NCBI RefSeq assembly: GCF_006345805.1
Contig: NW_021827048.1
Coordinates: 1 to 11,235 of the forward strand
Direction of reading: 5' to 3'
DNA length: 11,235 nucleotides
From: Octopus sinensis
Lineage: Eukaryota
The notes under the pieces are model-generated. The model worked only from the letters and a program-made list of their open reading frames with translations. It did no database searches and was not told the origin of the DNA. A program made the position numbers and the translations under genes. This document shows, piece by piece, positions 421 through 11,235 of this stretch; position 1 is the stretch's first letter; each line of letters starts with the position of its first letter.

Positions 421-435
421 ATGAAGATGATCCAA
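421..435 (+). CDS. IL17: Putative first coding exon of the IL-17-like gene (MKMIQ)
   Basis: aaaaATG AAG ATG ATC CAA|GTAAGA: A at -3, strong donor at 436, phase 0. This matches the phase-0 acceptor at 5542/5543 and yields MKMIQFLFKFAIFLLNFTSIVLSA, a typical signal peptide (basic N-region, hydrophobic core, small residues at the cleavage site). Confidence 0.7.
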
Positions 436-500
436 GTAAGAATATTCAATTTATATATACTCTCATCTCTTATGTTTAACTTGCTTGAATTATAGTGGGG

Positions 501-778
501 CATCACCTTCAAAGTTTTAGCTGCAGAAGATCAAACCCAGTACCTAATTTTTGAAGTCGGGTATATATGCTATGGCCCGAGTTCAAATTCCGCCGAGGTC
601 GACTTTGCCTTTCATCCTTTCGGGGTCGATAAATTAAGTACCAGTTACGCACTGAGGTCGATGTAATCGACTTAATCCCTTTGTCCGTCCTTGTTTGTCC
701 CCTCTGTGTTTAGCCCCTTGTGGGTAGTAAAGAAATATATATATATATGCTATGGCCCTTCTCTCGTTAAAACGCTGA
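501..778 (-). mobile_element. Old, diverged 3' fragment of the main SINE family, interrupted by the younger SINE at 579-741
   Basis: With 579-741 and one TSD removed, the sequence cacc..ttttag..acccagtacctaatttttgaagtcgggtatatatgctatggcccttctctcgttaaaacgctga aligns by eye with cacc..tttag..acccgggacttattcttttttgtaagcccagtacttatgctatcggtctcttttgccgaaccgctaa of the copy at 943-1358. Confidence 0.5.
579..741 (+). mobile_element. 5'-truncated tRNA-derived SINE of a second family, with a 17-bp target-site duplication
   Basis: Begins at a Pol III B-box-like GAGTTCAAATTC. Central GGTCGACTTTGCCTTTCATCCTTTCGGGGTCGATAAATTAAGTACCAG resembles, from memory, the Nin-type SINE central domain. Ends in AAAGAAATATA. 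Flanked by identical TATATATGCTATGGCCC at 562-578 and 742-758. Confidence 0.85.
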
Positions 779-855
779 TACTACAGAAAAAAATGTCAAG
801 CGCATTGGGGTGTGACAAACACAAGCGTACACATACCCACGCGTTCATACAAACG

Positions 856-857
<2 letters not shown>

Positions 858-935
<78 letters not shown>

Positions 936-938
936 GTT
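858..938. repeat. Compound (TA)n-(TG)n microsatellite
   Basis: Directly visible; source of the YIYIYI/VCVCV pseudo-ORFs. Confidence 0.95.
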
Positions 939-942
939 TGTA

Positions 943-1358
943 TACTCTTTTATACTCTTTTACTTGTTTCAGTCCTTTGACTGCGGCCATGCTGGAGCAC
1001 CGCCTTTAGTCGAGCGACTCGACCCGGGACTTATTCTTTTTTTGTAAGCCCAGTACTTATGCTATCGGTCTCTTTTGCCGAACCGCTAAGTAACGGGGAC
1101 ATAAAACACAACACCAGCCTCGGTTGTCAAGCAATGCTAGGGGGACAAACACAGACACACAAACAAACACACATACATATATATACACATATATACGACA
1201 GGCTTCTTTCAGTTTCCGTCTACCAAATCCACTCACAAGGCATTGGTCGGCCCGGGGCTATAGCAGAAGACACTTGCCCAAGATGCACGGCAGTGAGACT
1301 GAACCCGGAACCATGTTTTTTGTTAGCAAGCTACTTACCACACAGCCACTCCTGCGCC
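943..1358 (-). mobile_element. Full-length tRNA-derived SINE (main family, copy 1)
   Basis: Reverse complement closely matches 7912-8265 and 9114-9552. Head GGCGCAGGAGTGGCTGTGTGGTAAG with A-box and B-box-like GGTTCAGT; CORE-like TCTTGGGCAAGTGTCTT; internal TA/TG microsatellite; tail of AAAAGAGTA repeats. Resembles octopus tRNA-derived SINEs from memory. Confidence 0.92.
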
Positions 1359-1436
1359 TATGTATATATATATATGTATGTATATATATATATAATATAT
1401 ATAATATATATATATATTATTATATATATATATATA

Positions 1437-1483
<47 letters not shown>

Positions 1484-1484
1484 T
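1359..1484. repeat. Imperfect (TA)n microsatellite
   Basis: Directly visible, abutting the SINE head. Confidence 0.95.
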
Positions 1485-1672
1485 GACGTGATAAAATACA
1501 GGAGGATCGATTAATTGTAATTTTCTTTAGCATATTCCCCTCTCATATTCATACACATACTGCAGCAGAACTTTGTTTTTCTAAGTCCTATAAAAGAACT
1601 CGGAAGGTTGAGCTTTCAACCAGACCTTTCGTGACACCCTTAAAGTCAGGAAATATTCAGCATCTCACAGTT

Positions 1673-2000
1673 TGTATGTACGTATGCATGTATGTATGTA
1701 TGTATGTATATATATGTGTGTGTGTGAGAGGGGGTGGGCTTGTATGTGTACATATATATATGTGCATATATATATATATGTATATATGTGTATATGTATA
1801 TATATATGTATGTGTGTATCTGTATATATGTGTGTGTATGTATATGTGCATATGTGTGTGTATATATATATGATGTATGTGAATACGTATTTATTAATTA
1901 TATTGTTTGTATCTTCCCATACACTCACGTATGTGTATGTGTGAGAGTGTGTGTGTATGCTTTTGTGCATGCATGTGTGTATGTATGTGTGCATATTCTT
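1673..2000. repeat. Degenerate TA/TG/TATG low-complexity tract
   Basis: Directly visible; source of five overlapping pseudo-ORFs. Confidence 0.9.
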
Positions 2001-2440
2001 ATGTGTTAGGTGTATACATATATATTCCTTGTGAATTGATAATAAATTTTTCCTTCATATATTTGTTTCTTATTCATTTTTGAATGTCTTCCCTAATCAG
2101 GGCAATTTTTGAGTGGGGATTTTTTAAAAATAAATCATATATGTTCAAATATAGAATCAATTTAAATATAGTTTTGTTATTTAGCTAGAAGCTTCTAATA
2201 ATATTTTTTTCCGTTTTCTCTATAAATATGTATACACCCGACATTCTATGGGTTTTTTTCCTATTAGTGAACGTGGTGTTTATATCTGCTAGACACACGT
2301 GTTTTTGTTTACATTATATTTCGTCTCGATCTTTTACTATTTTTAAGTATATCCGTCAGACTTTTTAAGTTATAGCTTTCTGCACAAATAGACTTCCATA
2401 CACATTGGTATGTCTTTCTTTTTCTTTAATATTTTCCCTA

Positions 2441-2606
2441 TTACTCCATGTTTTTTCCTTACTCTTTTTTCCTTACTTGTTTCAGTCAGTTGACTGCGGC
2501 CATGCTAGAGCACCGCCTTTAGTCGAGCAACTCGACCCCGGGACTTATTCTTTGTAAGCCCAGTGCTTATTCTATCGGTCTCCTTTGCCGAACCGCTAAG
2601 TGACGG
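2441..2606 (-). mobile_element. 5'-truncated 3' fragment of the main SINE family (copy 2)
   Basis: 2473-2606 is near-identical to 959-1096 and to the reverse complement of 9398-9532. A degenerate ttactc...ttttttcc tail repeat occupies 2441-2472. Confidence 0.9.
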
Positions 2607-2683
2607 TGAATTTTATTAATAACTTTTTGATGCTTTTCCTAAAATTTCCTCTCACTGATGAGAATGACAATGCATACCTCAAA

Positions 2684-2685
<2 letters not shown>

Positions 2686-2724
<39 letters not shown>

Positions 2725-2734
2725 TTATTATTAT

Positions 2735-2766
<32 letters not shown>

Positions 2767-2793
2767 TATTATATTATTATTATTATTATTTTA

Positions 2794-2829
<36 letters not shown>

Positions 2830-2886
2830 CATCATCATCATCATCATCATCATCATTATTATAATAATAATATATAATATTATTAA

Positions 2887-2970
<84 letters not shown>

Positions 2971-3006
2971 CATCATCATCATCATCATCATCATCATTAT
3001 TATTAT
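2686..3006. repeat. Compound (ATT)n/(ATC)n trinucleotide microsatellite
   Basis: Long ATT runs with three ATC blocks starting at 2735 (10 units), 2828 (9) and 2969 (9). Source of the poly-I/L/Y/M pseudo-ORFs. Confidence 0.95.
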
Positions 3007-3186
3007 TTTTAAATATTTGTATTGTCTTTTGAAAAGTGCGTATGCATTGAATTCAATTTTGTATTAAATCCAAGTTTGATTTTAACATATAATCTTTCCA
3101 TTTTTATACTTGTTTATGGTATTTTTATACCTATAAAGAATTTTTCATTTATATATGTTTATATGTATGCATCATGGGATTCGACA

Positions 3187-3290
3187 CAGTTTCCGTCTGC
3201 CAAATTCGCCTACAATGCTTTGGTCGAGCCGGTGTGAGACAGGAAGCGACTTACCCATTGTGCCACGCGATGTGGTGAATTCTGAAACAT
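3187..3290 (-). mobile_element. Diverged internal fragment of the main SINE family or an older relative
   Basis: cagtttccgtctgccaaattcgcctacaatgctttggtcgagccgg...gaagcgacttacccattgtgccacgc aligns with cagtttccgtctaccaaatccactcacaaggcattggtcggcccgg...gaagacacttgcccaagatgc at 1210-1286. Confidence 0.75.
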
Positions 3291-3721
3291 AAAACTGTAT
3301 ATTCGCATACATTAATGTATGAAAATATCCATACATTAATATTATTACATGCTTTATGATATTTCCATTATTAAGCATACATATTTTTGGAATGTTAATA
3401 AGAAAATGATAAACGTAGACAAAGCATGTAGCTATGCTCAAAGGAACATAACCTCCATCAGTCAAGCGACTTTTGATGAATATTTAGCTTGCAGTTGATT
3501 TCTAGGGCACATTTAGGTATGATATACATAACTCTGGTTTATGTACAAGAAATTACTTATTTGATTTGCATATTGTCTTTTATATCATAGGGGTACTAAT
3601 TTAATTAGAATTACAGAATGGCAGATGAGTTCAAATGAATCGATTCTTCGTAATGCTTTGTAGAGTATATTTACAAACGCTTCAAAACATTTTAACTATG
3701 GAAAGCTTCCAAAAACCATAA

Positions 3722-3808
<87 letters not shown>

Positions 3809-3818
3809 GTATCTATCC

Positions 3819-3878
<60 letters not shown>

Positions 3879-3909
3879 CCTGTCTGTCTGTCTATCTATC
3901 TATCTATCT
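3722..3909. repeat. (ATCT)n tetranucleotide microsatellite in two blocks
   Basis: Directly visible; interrupted near 3808-3822 and by (GTCT) units near 3881-3891. Confidence 0.95.
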
Positions 3910-4384
3910 TGTAATAATCTGATGGAATAGACGACGATGATAAAGATTTTACAAATCTTAAGACATTATTTTCATAGAGAGGATTGTCGGTGTGTTTATT
4001 TAAAATCACTGAATCAATGACCGAAATATATTAGTTCCTGCGATGAATGCTGTATTCCAACGAGAAGATATATATATCTCCATATAACTACAATTTATTT
4101 CTCTTTTTCCATCACCTTCCTCTCCTCCCCACCAAATACACAGAGAAATACATACATAAATCAATCAGCCCTTGCACTGGTCAAAAGCGATAAACATCCC
4201 TGTGTTAACCATCTATTAATGTTATATCGCTTGAAGTAATGAATCCAGACAGATGATGAACCCGGCGCCCACAGGTACTACGGATTACACTGTAACTCAG
4301 TATCGATTTATGAGGAAGTAGCCTGAGGATGGTTGGAAATGACACAAATATGTGAAAACACCTGTACTCTTTCACTACAACTTT

Positions 4385-4583
4385 GTCTTACTCTTCCCGT
4401 TGCACCTGCGTTTCAAATGGTTAGCCTTGCCACACTCTGTGTTACGCTGAATCTCCCCGAGAACTACGTTAAGGGTACACGTGTCTGTGGAGCGCTCAGC
4501 CACTTGCACGTTAATATCACGAGCAGGCTGCTCCGTTGATTGGATCAACTGGAACCCTCGACGTCGTAACCGACGGAGTGCCA
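4385..4583 (+). mobile_element. Probable 3' fragment of a third interspersed retroposon family
   Basis: GC- and CpG-rich block in an AT-rich intron, ending in GTCGTAACCGACGGAGTGCCA followed by a TGATA/TA-repeat tail. It resembles an abundant octopus repeat end from memory only; there is no second copy in the window. Confidence 0.45.
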
Positions 4584-4668
4584 TGATATATGATATGATA
4601 TATATATACATCTGTATATATATATGTATATATATATATGTATATATATATATATGTATATATTATAT

Positions 4669-4876
4669 ATTACATATAATAGAAATATTAAAATTAAAAT
4701 AATAATAATATACCAATGATTAAGTAGATTGCAAAATAATAATAAAAACGTATATATTTGGTAGAATAACTATATTATATTATATTTAGTGAAATTTGAT
4801 TTAGTATTTCTAAATTGAATTTTCCTTCTTTAAGCTGGGAATAATATTCCCTCAAATAATTATTATATATATATGA

Positions 4877-4923
<47 letters not shown>

Positions 4924-4959
4924 ACGTATATATATATGCATGCATACACACACACAAAC

Positions 4960-5053
<94 letters not shown>

Positions 5054-5108
5054 ATGTTTGTGTGTGTGTATGCATGCATATATATATAGCGTATATATAT
5101 ATATATAT

Positions 5109-5160
<52 letters not shown>

Positions 5161-5358
5161 TATATATATAATTATTTGAGGGAATATTATTCCAGCTTAA
5201 AGGGAAAATTCAATTTAGAAATACTAAATCAATTTCACTAAATATAATATAATATAGTTATTCTACCAAATATATACGTTTTTATTATTATTTTGCAAAA
5301 TACTTAATCATTGGTATATTATTATTATTTTTATTTTAATATTTCTATTATATGTAAT
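4669..5358. repeat. ~690-bp near-perfect inverted duplication (palindrome) centred on a TA tract
   Basis: 4669-4863 is the reverse complement of 5168-5358 with 3 substitutions and 4 indel bases. The inner marker TGCATGCATACACACACACAAACA (4937-4960) is mirrored exactly at 5055-5078. Centre ~5008. Confidence 0.95.
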
Positions 5359-5409
5359 TTTCTAGATGTAATTTAATTTTGAATGGATAAAATGTTTCTT
5401 TTTCTAATT

Positions 5410-5410
<1 letters not shown>

Positions 5411-5476
<66 letters not shown>

Positions 5477-5488
5477 GTAATAATATAT
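5411..5488. repeat. (TA)n microsatellite
   Basis: Directly visible, ending ~30 bp upstream of the branch point. Confidence 0.95.
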
Positions 5489-5542
5489 GATAAATTGAAA
5501 GTGAAATCCATCACTCGACTAACATATTTTCTTTATTTGCAG

Positions 5543-6070
5543 TTTCTCTTCAAGTTTGCCATATTCCTCTTGAACTTCACCTCGATTGTGTTGTCAGCCG
5601 CAATTCCGAACCAGTGTGAAATACCAACGAATCTGAAAGTCCAATATGAGAGTCTCTCCAATGCAGCCATTGGCAATAATTTTTTTCTACCAGCTGAAAT
5701 GTCTCCAGCCGGAAGTAAACAATCACTGACCGACGGGGATAAAACTTGCCCAACATCTACTGCTTCTACAAATAACATACGCGAGCGCTCTACCTGTCCT
5801 TGGTACCTGACCATAACTCATGATACAACAATTTTCCCTCCATCACGTACTGAAGTTATGTGTCGATGTACAAAGTGTTTAGACACTGACAGTGGCAACC
5901 ATGAATGTGTGATGGTTTATACTCCAATGACTGTCCTGAAACGTACAGGCGAATGTGTTGATGGACTGTACGTTTATAAACCAAGTGTGATTAAAGTGGC
6001 CACAGCCTGTGCGTGTGCACGGAAGGTTGATGTCATTGAGAAGGAAACTGAGCATGACTATGAGTCATAG
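5543..6070 (+). CDS. IL17: Interleukin-17 family cytokine, main coding exon (175 aa + TAG)
   Basis: RSTCPW (5786-5803; vertebrate RSxSPW), FPxxxxEVMCRCxKC, CVxVYxxMxVLKR, GLYVY and VATACAC (cystine-knot CxC), plus a hydrophobic signal-peptide segment at the exon start. The track's start at 5495 is an intronic TTG; the real boundary is CAG|TTT at 5542/5543. The symbol denotes the family, not orthology to a vertebrate IL17A-F. Confidence 0.93.
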   Translation, partial: FLFKFAIFLLNFTSIVLSAAIPNQCEIPTNLKVQYESLSNAAIGNNFFLPAEMSPAGSKQSLTDGDKTCPTSTASTNNIRERSTCPWYLTITHDTTIFPPSRTEVMCRCTKCLDTDSGNHECVMVYTPMTVLKRTGECVDGLYVYKPSVIKVATACACARKVDVIEKETEHDYES

Positions 6071-6270: not shown

Positions 6271-6455
6271 ATTAATATGTATGTGTGTGTATTTGCTTTA
6301 ACATACGCTTTATAACATCGACATTTGCATATTTAAAACAAAAATCTTGTTGCAATTTTATTTAATCGCCTGTAAGTTATTTCATTATATCTGTACATAT
6401 GAAATCATTCACAAAATCATTTACGAATCATTTAACCACACAAAATGCTATGTCA

Positions 6456-6790
6456 CCTTTTATTTAAACACACACGTGCCTTTTATTTAAACACACACGC
6501 GCCTTTTATTTAAAGATACACGTACCTTTTATTTAAACACACACGCACTTTATATTTAAACACACACGTATCTTTTATTTAAACACACACGCACTTTATA
6601 TTTAAACACACACGCGCCTTTTATTTAAACACACACGTGCCTTTTATTTAAACACACACACACCTTTTATTTAAACACACACACACACACCTTTTATTTA
6701 AACACACACGTACCTGTTATTTAAACACACACACCTTTTATTTAAATACACACACACCTTTTATTTAAAGAAGCACACACACACACACGT
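6456..6790. repeat. Minisatellite, 14 copies of a ~23-bp unit, consensus CCTTTTATTTAAACACACACGYR
   Basis: Units start at 6456, 6479, 6502, 6525, 6548, 6571, 6594, 6617, 6640, 6663, 6690, 6713, 6734 and 6757. The period is exactly 23 for the first nine units, then varies with CA slippage. Confidence 0.97.
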
Positions 6791-7861: not shown

Positions 7862-8082
7862 CTCGTGAATTCCACTTTTTTCTCTTTCTCATATATATAT
7901 ATATATATATAGGCGCAGGAGTGGCTGTGTGGTAAGTAGCTTGCTAACCAACCACATGGCTGCGGGTTCAGTCCCACTGCGTGGCATCTTGGGCAAGTGT
8001 CTTCTGCTATAGCCCCGGGCCGACCAATGCCTTGTGAGTGGATTTGGTAGACGGAAACTGAAAGAAGCCTGTCGTATATATG

Positions 8083-8113
<31 letters not shown>

Positions 8114-8263
8114 CTGTGTTTGTCCCCCTAGCATTGCTTGGCAACCGATGCTGGTGTGTTTACGTCCCCGTCACTTACAAAGAATAAGTCCCGGGGTCGA
8201 TTTGCTCGACTAAAAGCGGTGCTCCAGCATGGCCGCAGTCAAATGATTGAAACAAGTAAAAGA

Positions 8264-8304
<41 letters not shown>

Positions 8305-9113: not shown

Positions 9114-9286
9114 AGTGACTGTGTGGTAAGTAGCTTGCTAACCAACCACATGGTTCCGGGTTCAGTTCCACTGCGTGGCATCTTGGGCAAGTGTCTTCTG
9201 CTATAGCCCCGGGCCGACCAATGCCTTGTGAGTGGATTTGGTAGACGGAAACTGAAAGAAGCCTGTCGTATATATGTATATATATG

Positions 9287-9334
<48 letters not shown>

Positions 9335-9552
9335 TTTGTGTGTCTGTGTTTGTCCCCCTAGCATTGCTTGACAACCGATGCTAGTGTGTTTACGTCCCCG
9401 TCACTTAGCGGTTCGGCAAAAGAGACCGATAGAATAAGTACTGGGCTTACAAAGAATAAGTCCCGGGGTCGATTTGCTCGACTAAAGGCGGTGCTCCAGC
9501 ATGGCCGCAGTCAAAATGACTGAAACAAGTAAAAGAGTAAAGAGTAAAGAGT
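9114..9552 (+). mobile_element. tRNA-derived SINE, main family copy 4, missing ~8 nt at the 5' end
   Basis: Near-identical to copy 3 and to the reverse complement of copy 1; tail AAAAGAGT AAAGAGT AAAGAGT. Confidence 0.92.
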
Positions 9553-10872: not shown

Positions 10873-11235
10873 AAATAAGAGAAAATAAACAGAGTGAGTA
10901 AAAAAAATCTTGTCGACTTCAGCAGTCCAGCATGGCTAAAAATTATATATATATATATATTAATAAATTAAATAATATAAATATAAAAATATACATACAT
11001 ACATATATATATATATATTTGTATATATATATAAAATTTATAAGTTTAAATTTTTTATTCTTAACTTTTATATTTTTAAATTAATTTTATGTATTGGCTT
11101 ATGTTCTTCACTGTTTGATTTGCCTAATAGTGGTTTTATCTCTAATTTAATATAATAGCATATAATATAATATATTTATACTATAAAATTGGATTTAATC
11201 CTAAATCTCATTTTTCCCTGTAAGTTTGGATTTAT

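What the first reader, a model, noticed from the sequence alone, without database searches (positions are those of the whole stretch)
4669..5358. ~690-bp near-perfect palindrome in the IL-17 intron, 184 nt upstream of the acceptor
Seen: ~190-bp complex arms are reverse complements (3 substitutions, 4 indel bases) and the symmetry continues through the inner microsatellite, so there is almost no spacer. The left end abuts a TA tract and the right end runs into unique intron sequence. I see no clear TSD beyond TA-rich flanks. Inference, three options: (1) a real fold-back duplication by template switching at self-complementary TA repeats; (2) a foldback/MITE-like element; (3) a long-read hairpin chimera, which the homopolymer-type indels would fit. 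If real, the pre-mRNA forms a ~340-bp AU-rich duplex. Established: such duplexes are ADAR substrates, and coleoid cephalopods edit RNA extensively. It could affect splicing or yield small RNAs.
Basis: partly seen in the sequence, partly recalled or inferred. Interest (0 to 1): 0.75.

Follow-up and report, generated by a model that had tools for sequence, protein, structure and literature searches.

The report
AT-rich palindrome in octopus IL-17 intron
A 690-base, 86% A+T near-perfect palindrome really is written in the intron of an Octopus sinensis IL-17-like gene; it most likely arose when a stretch next to a TA microsatellite was copied backwards, a common and probably harmless kind of rearrangement in octopus DNA, though an assembly error cannot be excluded.

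Summary
Window 4669-5358 aligns with its own reverse complement end to end, with about 190-nt complex arms (3 substitutions, 4 indel bases) and a TA-rich centre that holds symmetric non-TA landmarks. The predicted RNA hairpin has 327 bp and -401 kcal/mol.

The window is a whole 11,235-bp unplaced PacBio contig of Octopus sinensis. The palindrome ends 184 nt upstream of the acceptor of exon 2 of an IL-17-like gene.

- **Origin.** The right arm plus its unique right flank has a single-arm paralogue on the O. sinensis chromosome. An O. bimaculoides paralogue has the same core beside a TA tract, with no partner. So the right arm is parental, the left arm is a derived inverted copy, and the palindrome edge is not a transposon end. 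No target-site duplication or further arm copy appeared in about 174 kb of octopus DNA.
- **Background.** Comparable close inverted repeats occur about once per 20 kb in that sample, across Illumina, PacBio and ONT assemblies. The orthologous O. bimaculoides intron has a different one.

Best reading: a lineage-specific fold-back duplication at a self-complementary TA tract (about 0.6). Assembly artefact is about 0.25 and mobile element about 0.08. ADAR editing is plausible but untested, and small RNAs are unlikely in molluscs. This is ordinary, with low-to-moderate interest.

The parts
421..435 (+). Exon 1 of the IL-17-like gene (MKMIQ), followed by the GT donor at 436
   Evidence: P0001 sequence and the gene range 421-6070 on contig VCDQ01012336.1; sequence read
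4362..4583 (+). SINE copy just upstream of the left TA tract
   Evidence: 84-86% matches to copies in L002, L003, L004 and L006; alignment A1 shows the element ending at ...CGACGGAGTGC
4586..4668 (.). TA-rich microsatellite forming the left junction. The derived arm is joined directly to it.
   Evidence: TRF row 4586-4678; alignment A2 shows only TA tract to the left of the left arm
4669..4863 (.). Left complex arm, the inferred derived inverted copy
   Evidence: Reverse complement of 5171-5358 with 3 substitutions and 4 indel bases. Unlike the right arm, it lacks the flank seen in the paralogue.
4864..5170 (.). TA-rich centre (9.8% G+C) with mirrored non-TA landmarks at 4937-4960 and 5056-5079. 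The predicted apical loop is at 5005-5012.
5171..5358 (.). Right complex arm, the inferred parental copy
   Evidence: Contiguous with flank 5359-5409 exactly as in the single-arm paralogue L006 19961-20146. The inner core beside a TA tract is also present in O. bimaculoides L008 8235-8330.
5359..5409 (+). Unique right flank outside the palindrome, homologous to the paralogous block
   Evidence: Window 5321-5429 matches L006 20080-19961 at 86%
5410..5488 (.). Second TA microsatellite bounding the parental block
   Evidence: TRF row 5410-5488; a TA tract occupies the same place in L006
5475..5542 (+). Conserved 3' end of the intron with the acceptor AG at 5541-5542. Orthologous alignment with O. 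bimaculoides resumes here.
   Evidence: Window 5475-6192 matches L001 11225-11941 at 90%
5543..6070 (+). Exon 2 of the IL-17-like gene, including the stop codon
   Evidence: Pfam PF06083 at 1.3e-14; 100% match to P0001

Best explanation
The palindrome is a lineage-specific inverted (fold-back) duplication of pre-existing non-coding DNA, not a mobile element.

The parental block was (TA)n, a TA-rich stretch with a few CA/GCAT landmarks, a roughly 190-nt AT-rich core (now the right arm) and a 51-nt flank. During replication or repair the nascent strand switched to the complementary strand at or near the self-complementary TA tract. It copied the core and the TA-rich stretch backwards and then switched back inside the TA tract. 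The result is TA tract, left arm, centre, right arm, flank. The product is a 690-bp, spacer-less, 86% A+T palindrome that resembles human palindromic AT-rich repeats.

Shown here: the symmetry, the asymmetric flanks, the single-arm paralogues, the absence of the palindrome from the O. bimaculoides orthologue, and the frequency of similar structures.

Inferred: the template-switch mechanism. I also infer that the palindrome is a neutral passenger of the intron. At DNA level it should be prone to hairpin or cruciform formation, which may be why this contig stayed short and unplaced. In the pre-mRNA it should fold into a roughly 330-bp AU-rich hairpin that ADAR could hyper-edit before the intron is degraded.
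For: - **Real sequence feature.** The palindrome is far beyond chance.
- **Right arm is parental.** Window 5321-5429, which is the outer 38 nt of the right arm plus the unique flank plus TA, matches O. sinensis chromosome locus L006 20080-19961 at 86%. Window 4771-4819 / 5209-5256 matches L006 20097-20146 at 90-92%. That site has no long inverted partner like the window's.
- **Core beside a TA tract is old.** O. bimaculoides L008 8235-8330 carries the same core abutting a TA tract, with unrelated sequence on the other side. The split is dated at 34 My.
- **Left arm is the derived copy.** It is joined directly to a TA tract and lacks the flank.
- **Lineage-specific.** The orthologous O. bimaculoides intron is 1.27 kb and lacks window 3226-5474 altogether.
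- **Same kind of event nearby.** The O. bimaculoides intron has A (L001 10775-10947) followed by the reverse complement of A plus a SINE fragment (11041-11213), 173 nt at 98%, in an Illumina-based assembly. L006 19316-19884 has 243-nt arms at 90%, too diverged to be a hairpin read artefact. L006 also holds a 32/35-nt inverted copy inside the paralogous block.
- **Common in the sample.** About 10 close inverted repeats occur in 174 kb across three sequencing technologies.
- **Arm differences.** The arms differ by a T/A substitution, a GA/TT dinucleotide and 3- and 10-base indels that are not homopolymer errors.
- **Literature.** O. bimaculoides has an exceptionally high fraction of loci able to form long near-perfect dsRNA (PMC5625713).
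Against: - The window is a whole 11,235-bp unplaced PacBio contig, the class of sequence most prone to error, and no independent reads or assembly of this locus could be reached.
- Three of the five arm differences are 1-2-base indels, which fits residual long-read consensus error.
- The contig ends exactly where, in the paralogue L006, a copy of the arm block follows. Confusion between repeats during assembly is therefore conceivable.
- The O. bimaculoides orthologue lacks the whole 2.2-kb segment, so it provides no one-arm 'before' state at the orthologous site.
- The sister species O. vulgaris could not be examined at this locus.
- The template-switch mechanism is inferred from the end product only.
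Confidence: 0.6

Rival explanations
1. Assembly artefact. The left arm, or the whole insert between the two TA tracts, does not exist in the animal. It was created by a palindromic chimeric long read and/or false overlaps inside TA microsatellites, possibly involving a true copy of the arm block lying just beyond the contig end.
For: - The window is a short unplaced PacBio contig.
- All block boundaries are TA tracts, where false overlaps are easy.
- Several arm differences are 1-2-base indels.
- In paralogue L006 the arm-like block follows the sequence at which this contig stops.
Against: - A missed-adapter read gives a palindrome that runs to the read end. Here the arms are 345 nt and the two flanks are different unique sequences.
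- No SMRTbell adapter remnant was found (the adapter sequence was taken from memory).
- The arms differ by substitutions (T/A and GA/TT) and by 3- and 10-base indels containing non-TA bases.
- Outside the O. sinensis-specific intron segment 3226-5474 and SINE insertions, the contig is collinear with the O. bimaculoides orthologue out to about 10900, where detectable homology ends.
- Palindromes of the same design exist with 90% arms and in an Illumina-only assembly.
Confidence: 0.25
2. A foldback or MITE-like mobile element of about 690 bp that inserted into a TA tract in the intron.
For: - The element is short, AT-rich, fully hairpin-forming and next to TA repeats.
- TA-CATATAAT...ATTATATG-TA can be read as a TA target duplication.
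- Other hairpin elements that look like MITEs occur nearby, for example L006 21674-21957.
- The inner arm is weakly similar to another local repeat: score 67 against 46 +/- 6, reached by 2 of 500 shuffles.
Against: - No other copy of the arms was found in about 174 kb (non-N) of octopus DNA.
- The only homologues are single-armed.
- Their homology continues 51 nt or more past the right 'terminus' into the flank, so the palindrome edge is not an element end.
- The TA reading of a target duplication is indistinguishable from two more palindromic bases.
- The left side lacks the flank that the right side has.
Confidence: 0.08
3. A selected regulatory hairpin. The intronic dsRNA is maintained because it recruits ADAR, modulates splicing or expression of this IL-17-like gene, or yields small RNAs.
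For: - A very stable hairpin is predicted 184 nt from the acceptor.
- Coleoids edit heavily.
- The orthologous O. bimaculoides intron also carries an inverted repeat.
Against: - The two species' inverted repeats are unrelated in sequence: alignment scores lie within the shuffle distributions.
- Such structures are common in non-coding DNA here, so recurrence is explained by mutation bias.
- There is no conservation and no Rfam match.
- Molluscs show no endo-siRNA pathway.
- The hairpin does not cover the conserved acceptor region.
Confidence: 0.05

Closest known systems
Human palindromic AT-rich repeats (PATRR11, PATRR22, PATRR8, and the intronic PATRR17 in NF1)
   Same: [quoted passage not shown] A PATRR also lies in an intron of NF1. 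That location is from my own knowledge. PMC4940405 lists only the title of the NF1 study in its references, and the study itself could not be fetched.
   Different: A+T is 86.4% here against more than 90% for PATRRs. The core here is a TA microsatellite with complex arms outside it. There is no evidence of cruciform formation, polymorphism or translocation. PATRR is a structural class, not a homologous family, and it is defined in humans.
Template-switch or fold-back inverted duplications (replication-based mechanisms such as FoSTeS/MMBIR and short template switches; named from established knowledge)
   Same: A parental segment sits beside its inverted copy, the junctions lie in self-complementary or microhomologous sequence, and one arm keeps the ancestral flank. 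The O. bimaculoides intron shows the classic duplication-inversion-with-deletion layout.
   Different: The mechanism is inferred from the product only. No ancestral one-arm allele at the orthologous site was available.
MITEs and foldback transposons, including the palindromic Harbinger-derived repeat of Xenopus that is heavily edited (PMC5625713)
   Same: Sub-kilobase, AT-rich and folding into a long hairpin on its own.
   Different: No target-site duplication, no dispersed copies in the sample, and homology to paralogues crosses the would-be terminus.
Inverted-repeat ADAR substrates (Alu pairs in primates; hyper-edited loci in octopus)
   Same: A long, nearly perfect intramolecular duplex inside a pre-mRNA intron. 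Octopus is reported to be rich in such loci and in hyper-editing.
   Different: It is made by local duplication of unique AT-rich DNA rather than by two SINE copies. Editing was not tested here.
Long-read hairpin (missed-adapter or fold-back) chimeras
   Same: Palindromic sequence in a PacBio contig, with some small indel differences between the arms.
   Different: The arms are short with unique, different flanks. There is no adapter remnant, and there are substitution differences between the arms.

Membership tests
Palindromic AT-rich repeat (PATRR-like structural class) | Several hundred base pairs long | tested here: met
   690 bp
Palindromic AT-rich repeat (PATRR-like structural class) | Nearly perfect palindrome without a spacer | tested here: met
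   327 of about 345 possible pairs and an 8-nt loop. The symmetry continues through the centre.
Palindromic AT-rich repeat (PATRR-like structural class) | More than 90% A+T (PMC4940405) | tested here: not met
   86.4% A+T overall, 90.2% in the centre and about 83% in the arms
Palindromic AT-rich repeat (PATRR-like structural class) | Cruciform or hairpin extrusion, size polymorphism, breakage at the centre | not testable with these tools
   Needs population data and wet-lab assays
MITE / foldback transposable element | Target-site duplication flanking the terminal inverted repeats | tested here: inconclusive
   The flanks are TATAT|ATTACA... and ...TGTAAT|TTTCTAG. The only candidate is a TA that is itself palindromic.
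MITE / foldback transposable element | Multiple dispersed copies sharing the same termini | tested here: not met
   No further two-armed or full-length copy in about 174 kb of non-N DNA from three octopus assemblies. The sample is small, so a low-copy family cannot be excluded.
MITE / foldback transposable element | Homology between copies stops at the element ends | tested here: not met
   Homology with L006 continues from the arm through the 51-nt flank into the TA tract
Fold-back / template-switch inverted duplication | One arm retains the ancestral flank and the other is joined to new sequence | tested here: met
   The right arm plus flank is collinear with L006. The left arm abuts only a TA tract.
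Fold-back / template-switch inverted duplication | Single-arm state in relatives | tested here: met
   Single-arm paralogues in O. sinensis L006 and O. bimaculoides L008. The orthologous site in O. bimaculoides lacks the whole segment, so no orthologous one-arm state was seen.
Fold-back / template-switch inverted duplication | Junctions in microhomology or self-complementary repeats | tested here: met
   The TA tract 4586-4668 is at the outer junction and a TA run is at the axis 5005-5012
Long-read hairpin chimera (artefact) | The palindrome extends to the end of the read or contig, so the flanks are mirror images | tested here: not met
   The alignment stops at 4669 and 5358. The flanks are unrelated.
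Long-read hairpin chimera (artefact) | Adapter remnant at the axis | tested here: not met
   No match with up to 3 mismatches. The centre is pure TA-type sequence. The adapter sequence was taken from memory.
Long-read hairpin chimera (artefact) | No independent read support for both arms | not testable with these tools
   No raw reads were available. P0001 is on record on one contig only.
ADAR hyper-editing substrate | Long near-perfect intramolecular dsRNA within a transcribed region | tested here: met
   Located in the intron of an annotated gene; -401 kcal/mol, helices of 31, 46 and 68 bp, z = -62
ADAR hyper-editing substrate | Clusters of A-to-G mismatches in RNA reads | not testable with these tools
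   No RNA-seq access

The most novel reading that the evidence does not exclude
Fold-back duplication at self-complementary microsatellites (TA and similar AT-rich tracts) may be a frequent, ongoing mutational process in octopus genomes. It would keep creating new long hairpins inside introns. In that case it, and not only inverted SINE pairs, would be a major source of the unusually large pool of near-perfect dsRNA that coleoid ADARs hyper-edit. This IL-17 intron and its O. bimaculoides orthologue would be two independent snapshots of that process.
Probability: 0.2. Interest if true: 0.55.

Novelty: new member of a known kind. Interest (0 to 1): 0.25.

Why it matters
On its own the palindrome matters little. 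It is one intronic inverted duplication in a genome where such structures are common, and nothing ties it to IL-17 function.

It has three practical uses.
- It is a clean example with an identifiable parental arm, a derived arm and single-arm paralogues, which suits the study of how AT-rich palindromes are born at TA microsatellites.
- It flags a spot where the O. sinensis assembly should be checked against reads.
- If transcribed, it is a ready-made test substrate for hyper-editing in an immune gene.

The broader pattern may deserve a genome-wide count. Independent inverted duplications sit in the same intron in two species, and there is roughly one close inverted repeat per 20 kb of the IL-17 cluster.

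Tried and rejected
- **Independent assembly of the locus.** The protein search found the gene product on one contig only, with no near-identical product from sequencing-run assemblies. The O. vulgaris orthologue is not annotated. The three O. vulgaris IL-17 loci fetched (L002-L004) are paralogues, so the sister-species test could not be made.
- **Homology between the two species' inverted repeats.** I tested whether the O. sinensis arms and the O. bimaculoides intron arms are related. They are not: the scores fall inside the shuffle distributions.
- **Known RNA families.** There were no Rfam matches at gathering thresholds and no tRNA genes.
- **Adapter remnant.** None was found.
- **Repeat-finder hits in L001.** The hits at 15538-16556 are runs of N, not repeats.
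- **Census filter.** My first census script missed self-overlapping palindromic alignments, including the window's own palindrome. I corrected it, and the L001 palindrome had to be added by hand because its full-length identity of 84% fell below the filter.
- **Literature.** The original O. sinensis genome paper and the NF1-palindrome paper are not in the held library.

Full report
**What the window is.** The exon downstream of the finding encodes an IL-17 domain (Pfam PF06083, 1.3e-14). Its product is identical to 'interleukin 17-like protein [Octopus sinensis]', P0001, 180 aa. That protein is on record on a single contig of exactly 11,235 bp, GCA_006345805.1 VCDQ01012336.1, which is the window itself. 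The window is therefore a complete, short, unplaced contig of the PacBio/Hi-C assembly of O. sinensis. Exon 1 is 421-435, the intron is 436-5542 and exon 2 is 5543-6070.

**The observation.** A local alignment of 4600-5420 with its reverse complement spans exactly 4669-5358. An ungapped search finds arms 4669-4796 / 5231-5358 at 98%.
- The complex arms (about 4669-4863 and 5171-5358) differ by one T/A substitution, one GA/TT dinucleotide and four indel bases.
- The TA-rich centre (4864-5170, 9.8% G+C) carries a mirrored non-TA landmark at 4937-4960 and 5056-5079, so the symmetry is not merely that of (TA)n.
- As RNA, the 690 nt fold into one hairpin of 327 pairs (282 A-U, 44 G-C, 1 G-U) at -401.4 kcal/mol, with an 8-nt loop at 5005-5012.
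- With short flanks the energy is -408.6 kcal/mol against -154.6 +/- 4.1 for dinucleotide shuffles, z = -62.

**Flanks.** To the left lie a SINE copy (4362-4583) and a TA-rich tract (4586-4668) that touches the left arm. To the right lie 51 nt of unique sequence (5359-5409), a second TA tract (5410-5488), and then the intron's 3' end, which is conserved with O. bimaculoides from 5475. There is no target-site duplication. The only candidate is a TA dinucleotide, which, being self-complementary, cannot be told apart from two more palindromic bases.

**The orthologue.** The O. bimaculoides orthologue (P0002, 87% identical; locus L001) is collinear with the window outside the intron segment discussed here and SINE insertions, out to about window 10900. 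Its intron, however, is only about 1.27 kb, and window 3226-5474, including the palindrome, has no counterpart there.

That intron has its own inverted repeat: L001 10775-10947 and 11041-11213, 173 nt at 98% with a 93-nt spacer. It is built from sequence that is single-copy in the window (about 2990-3225). Its layout is A followed by the reverse complement of A plus a SINE fragment. This is what a switch to the opposite strand and back would produce, together with loss of the intervening DNA. The arms of the two species are unrelated in sequence. O. bimaculoides was assembled without long reads (stated from my own knowledge of that assembly), so close, high-identity inverted duplications exist in this very intron independently of long-read artefacts.

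**Which arm is the original.** Among nine loci fetched around IL-17 paralogues, I found no second full copy of the arms. The loci come from O. sinensis, O. vulgaris and O. bimaculoides and total 174 kb of non-N sequence with the window.
- On the O. sinensis chromosome (L006, CM016859.1 at about 27.59 Mb), positions 19961-20146 match the reverse complement of window 5321-5429 at 86%. That stretch is the outer 38 nt of the right arm, the whole unique flank and the start of the TA tract. Positions 20097-20146 match the middle of the arm at 90-92%.
- In the three-way alignment, the chromosomal copy runs TA tract, flank, arm, exactly like the right arm read backwards. The left arm has only TA tract where the flank should be.
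- L006 has no long inverted partner like the window's at that site.
- In O. bimaculoides, L008 8235-8330, which lies 1.7 kb upstream of paralogue P0007, carries the inner core of the arm directly beside a TA tract. The sequence on the other side of that tract is unrelated.

Three things follow. The arrangement TA tract, core, flank is old; the split is dated at 34 My. The right arm is the parental copy and the left arm is a derived inverted copy. The right edge of the palindrome is not the end of a mobile unit, because homology runs straight through it.

**How common such structures are.** A census asked for arms with at least 90 non-microsatellite bases, at least about 84% identity and a spacer of at most 1 kb. 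It finds about ten cases in the 174 kb, in all three assemblies (Illumina, PacBio, ONT).
- Some are SINE pairs or look like MITEs, for example L006 21674-21957 and L002 14192-15118.
- Three are AT-rich with a microsatellite at the axis: the window's palindrome, the O. bimaculoides intron, and L006 19316-19884.
- The last has arms only 90% alike, so it is old and cannot be a hairpin read. One of its arms is the homologue of the window's last 300 bases (10938-11235).
- Even the paralogous block in L006 carries a 32/35-nt inverted copy of its own TA-plus-flank edge.

Published work agrees. O. bimaculoides has an exceptionally high fraction of loci that can form long, nearly perfect dsRNA (4.4e-3), and one of the two strongest hyper-editing signals among the animals compared (PMC5625713).

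**Best explanation.** The palindrome is a lineage-specific fold-back duplication. The nascent strand left the TA tract, copied the core and the TA-rich stretch from the opposite strand, and returned within the TA run. The product resembles human palindromic AT-rich repeats in size, symmetry and lack of a spacer (PMC4940405), although at 86.4% A+T it falls short of their >90%. I give this 0.6. The steps shown are the asymmetry of the flanks, the single-arm relatives, the absence from the O. bimaculoides orthologue and the recurrence of the pattern. The mechanism itself is inferred.

**Artefact.** This cannot be dismissed (0.25).
- For it: the contig is short and unplaced, every boundary is a TA tract, three arm differences are 1-2-base indels, and the contig stops exactly where the paralogue continues into an arm-like block.
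- Against it: a missed-adapter read would be palindromic to its end. Here the arms are 345 nt and the flanks differ. No adapter remnant is present (sequence from memory). The arms differ by substitutions and by 3- and 10-base indels containing non-TA bases. The rest of the contig agrees with the orthologue.

I could not reach raw reads, another O. sinensis assembly or the O. vulgaris orthologue.

**Mobile element (0.08).** This is disfavoured for the reasons given above.

**Selected regulatory hairpin (0.05).** This has no support. The two species' hairpins are unrelated. Such structures are frequent in neutral DNA. There is no Rfam match. The hairpin does not cover the conserved acceptor region.

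**Consequences.** The intron should carry an AU-rich duplex of about 330 bp with uninterrupted helices of 31, 46 and 68 bp. From established knowledge of ADAR, that is long enough for promiscuous editing, but the intron is removed, and no RNA data were available. [quoted passage not shown]

**Verdict.** The feature is real as written in the assembly and is correctly described. It is an ordinary member of a known and, in octopus, abundant class. Interest is 0.25.

Noticed in passing
L001 10744-11244 (O. bimaculoides orthologous intron); corresponds to window ~2990-3225: The orthologous intron in O. bimaculoides has its own inverted duplication, unrelated in sequence: 173-nt arms at 98% with a 93-nt spacer. 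Its layout is A followed by the reverse complement of A plus a SINE fragment, next to an (ATT)n tract. It appears to have been accompanied by loss of about 2.2 kb that O. sinensis retains, or else O. sinensis gained that segment.
   Followed up: partly
window 10938-11235; L006 19316-19884; L005 ~2368-2514, 11558-11839, 13444-13935: The last 300 bases of the contig are a local AT-rich repeat. In the chromosomal paralogue it forms a 570-bp palindrome with arms 90% alike, and in L005 it occurs as several copies on both strands. In L006 the arm-like block follows it directly, and the window contig ends exactly at that point. The inner part of the palindrome arm is weakly similar to this repeat (2 of 500 shuffles reach the score).
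   Followed up: partly
L006 19960-19992 and 20080-20113: The single-arm paralogue of the palindrome block carries a small inverted copy (32 of 35 bases) of its own TA-tract-plus-flank edge. This copy replaces about 65 nt of the arm and looks like a short template-switch footprint.
   Followed up: yes
L006 1397-1814 and 2910-3328 versus L003 10837-12608: Two copies of a tRNA-derived SINE sit in opposite orientation 1.1 kb apart in O. sinensis. They are 95% alike and each lies in a TA microsatellite. Both are absent from the orthologous O. vulgaris sequence, although the DNA between them is present there. Either two recent insertions occurred or the two assemblies differ.
   Followed up: partly
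L006 21674-21957: A 284-bp near-perfect hairpin (135-nt arms, 14-nt loop, 37% G+C) is flanked by TA and GA microsatellites. It looks like a MITE. Its copy number is unknown.
   Followed up: no
window 6454-6769: A 23-bp minisatellite (consensus CACCTTTTATTTAAACACACACG, 13.7 copies, 84% matches) begins about 385 nt after the stop codon. BLAST found no O. bimaculoides counterpart for window 6476-6754, and the flanking matches are contiguous in L001, so the array appears absent or much shorter there.
   Followed up: no
window 579-737, 941-1365, 2458-2609, 7891-8266, 9114-9548: Several SINE copies are present. The intronic copy at 941-1365 is inverted relative to the two downstream copies (239 and 206 nt at 90%). 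If the gene's transcript extended that far, these would be further dsRNA-forming pairs.
   Followed up: no
window 2683-3011 and 3722-3909: Large microsatellites lie in the same intron: a compound (ATT)n/(ATC)n array of 329 bp with partial internal mirror symmetry, and (TATC)47. About a fifth of the intron (roughly 1.1 of 5.1 kb) is simple repeat.
   Followed up: no
L002 14192-15118 (O. vulgaris, within the annotated range of paralogue P0034): An inverted repeat with arms of about 400 nt (89%, inner 130 nt at 99%) and a 137-nt spacer, richer in G+C than the window's palindrome. It looks like a transposon with long terminal inverted repeats.
   Followed up: no
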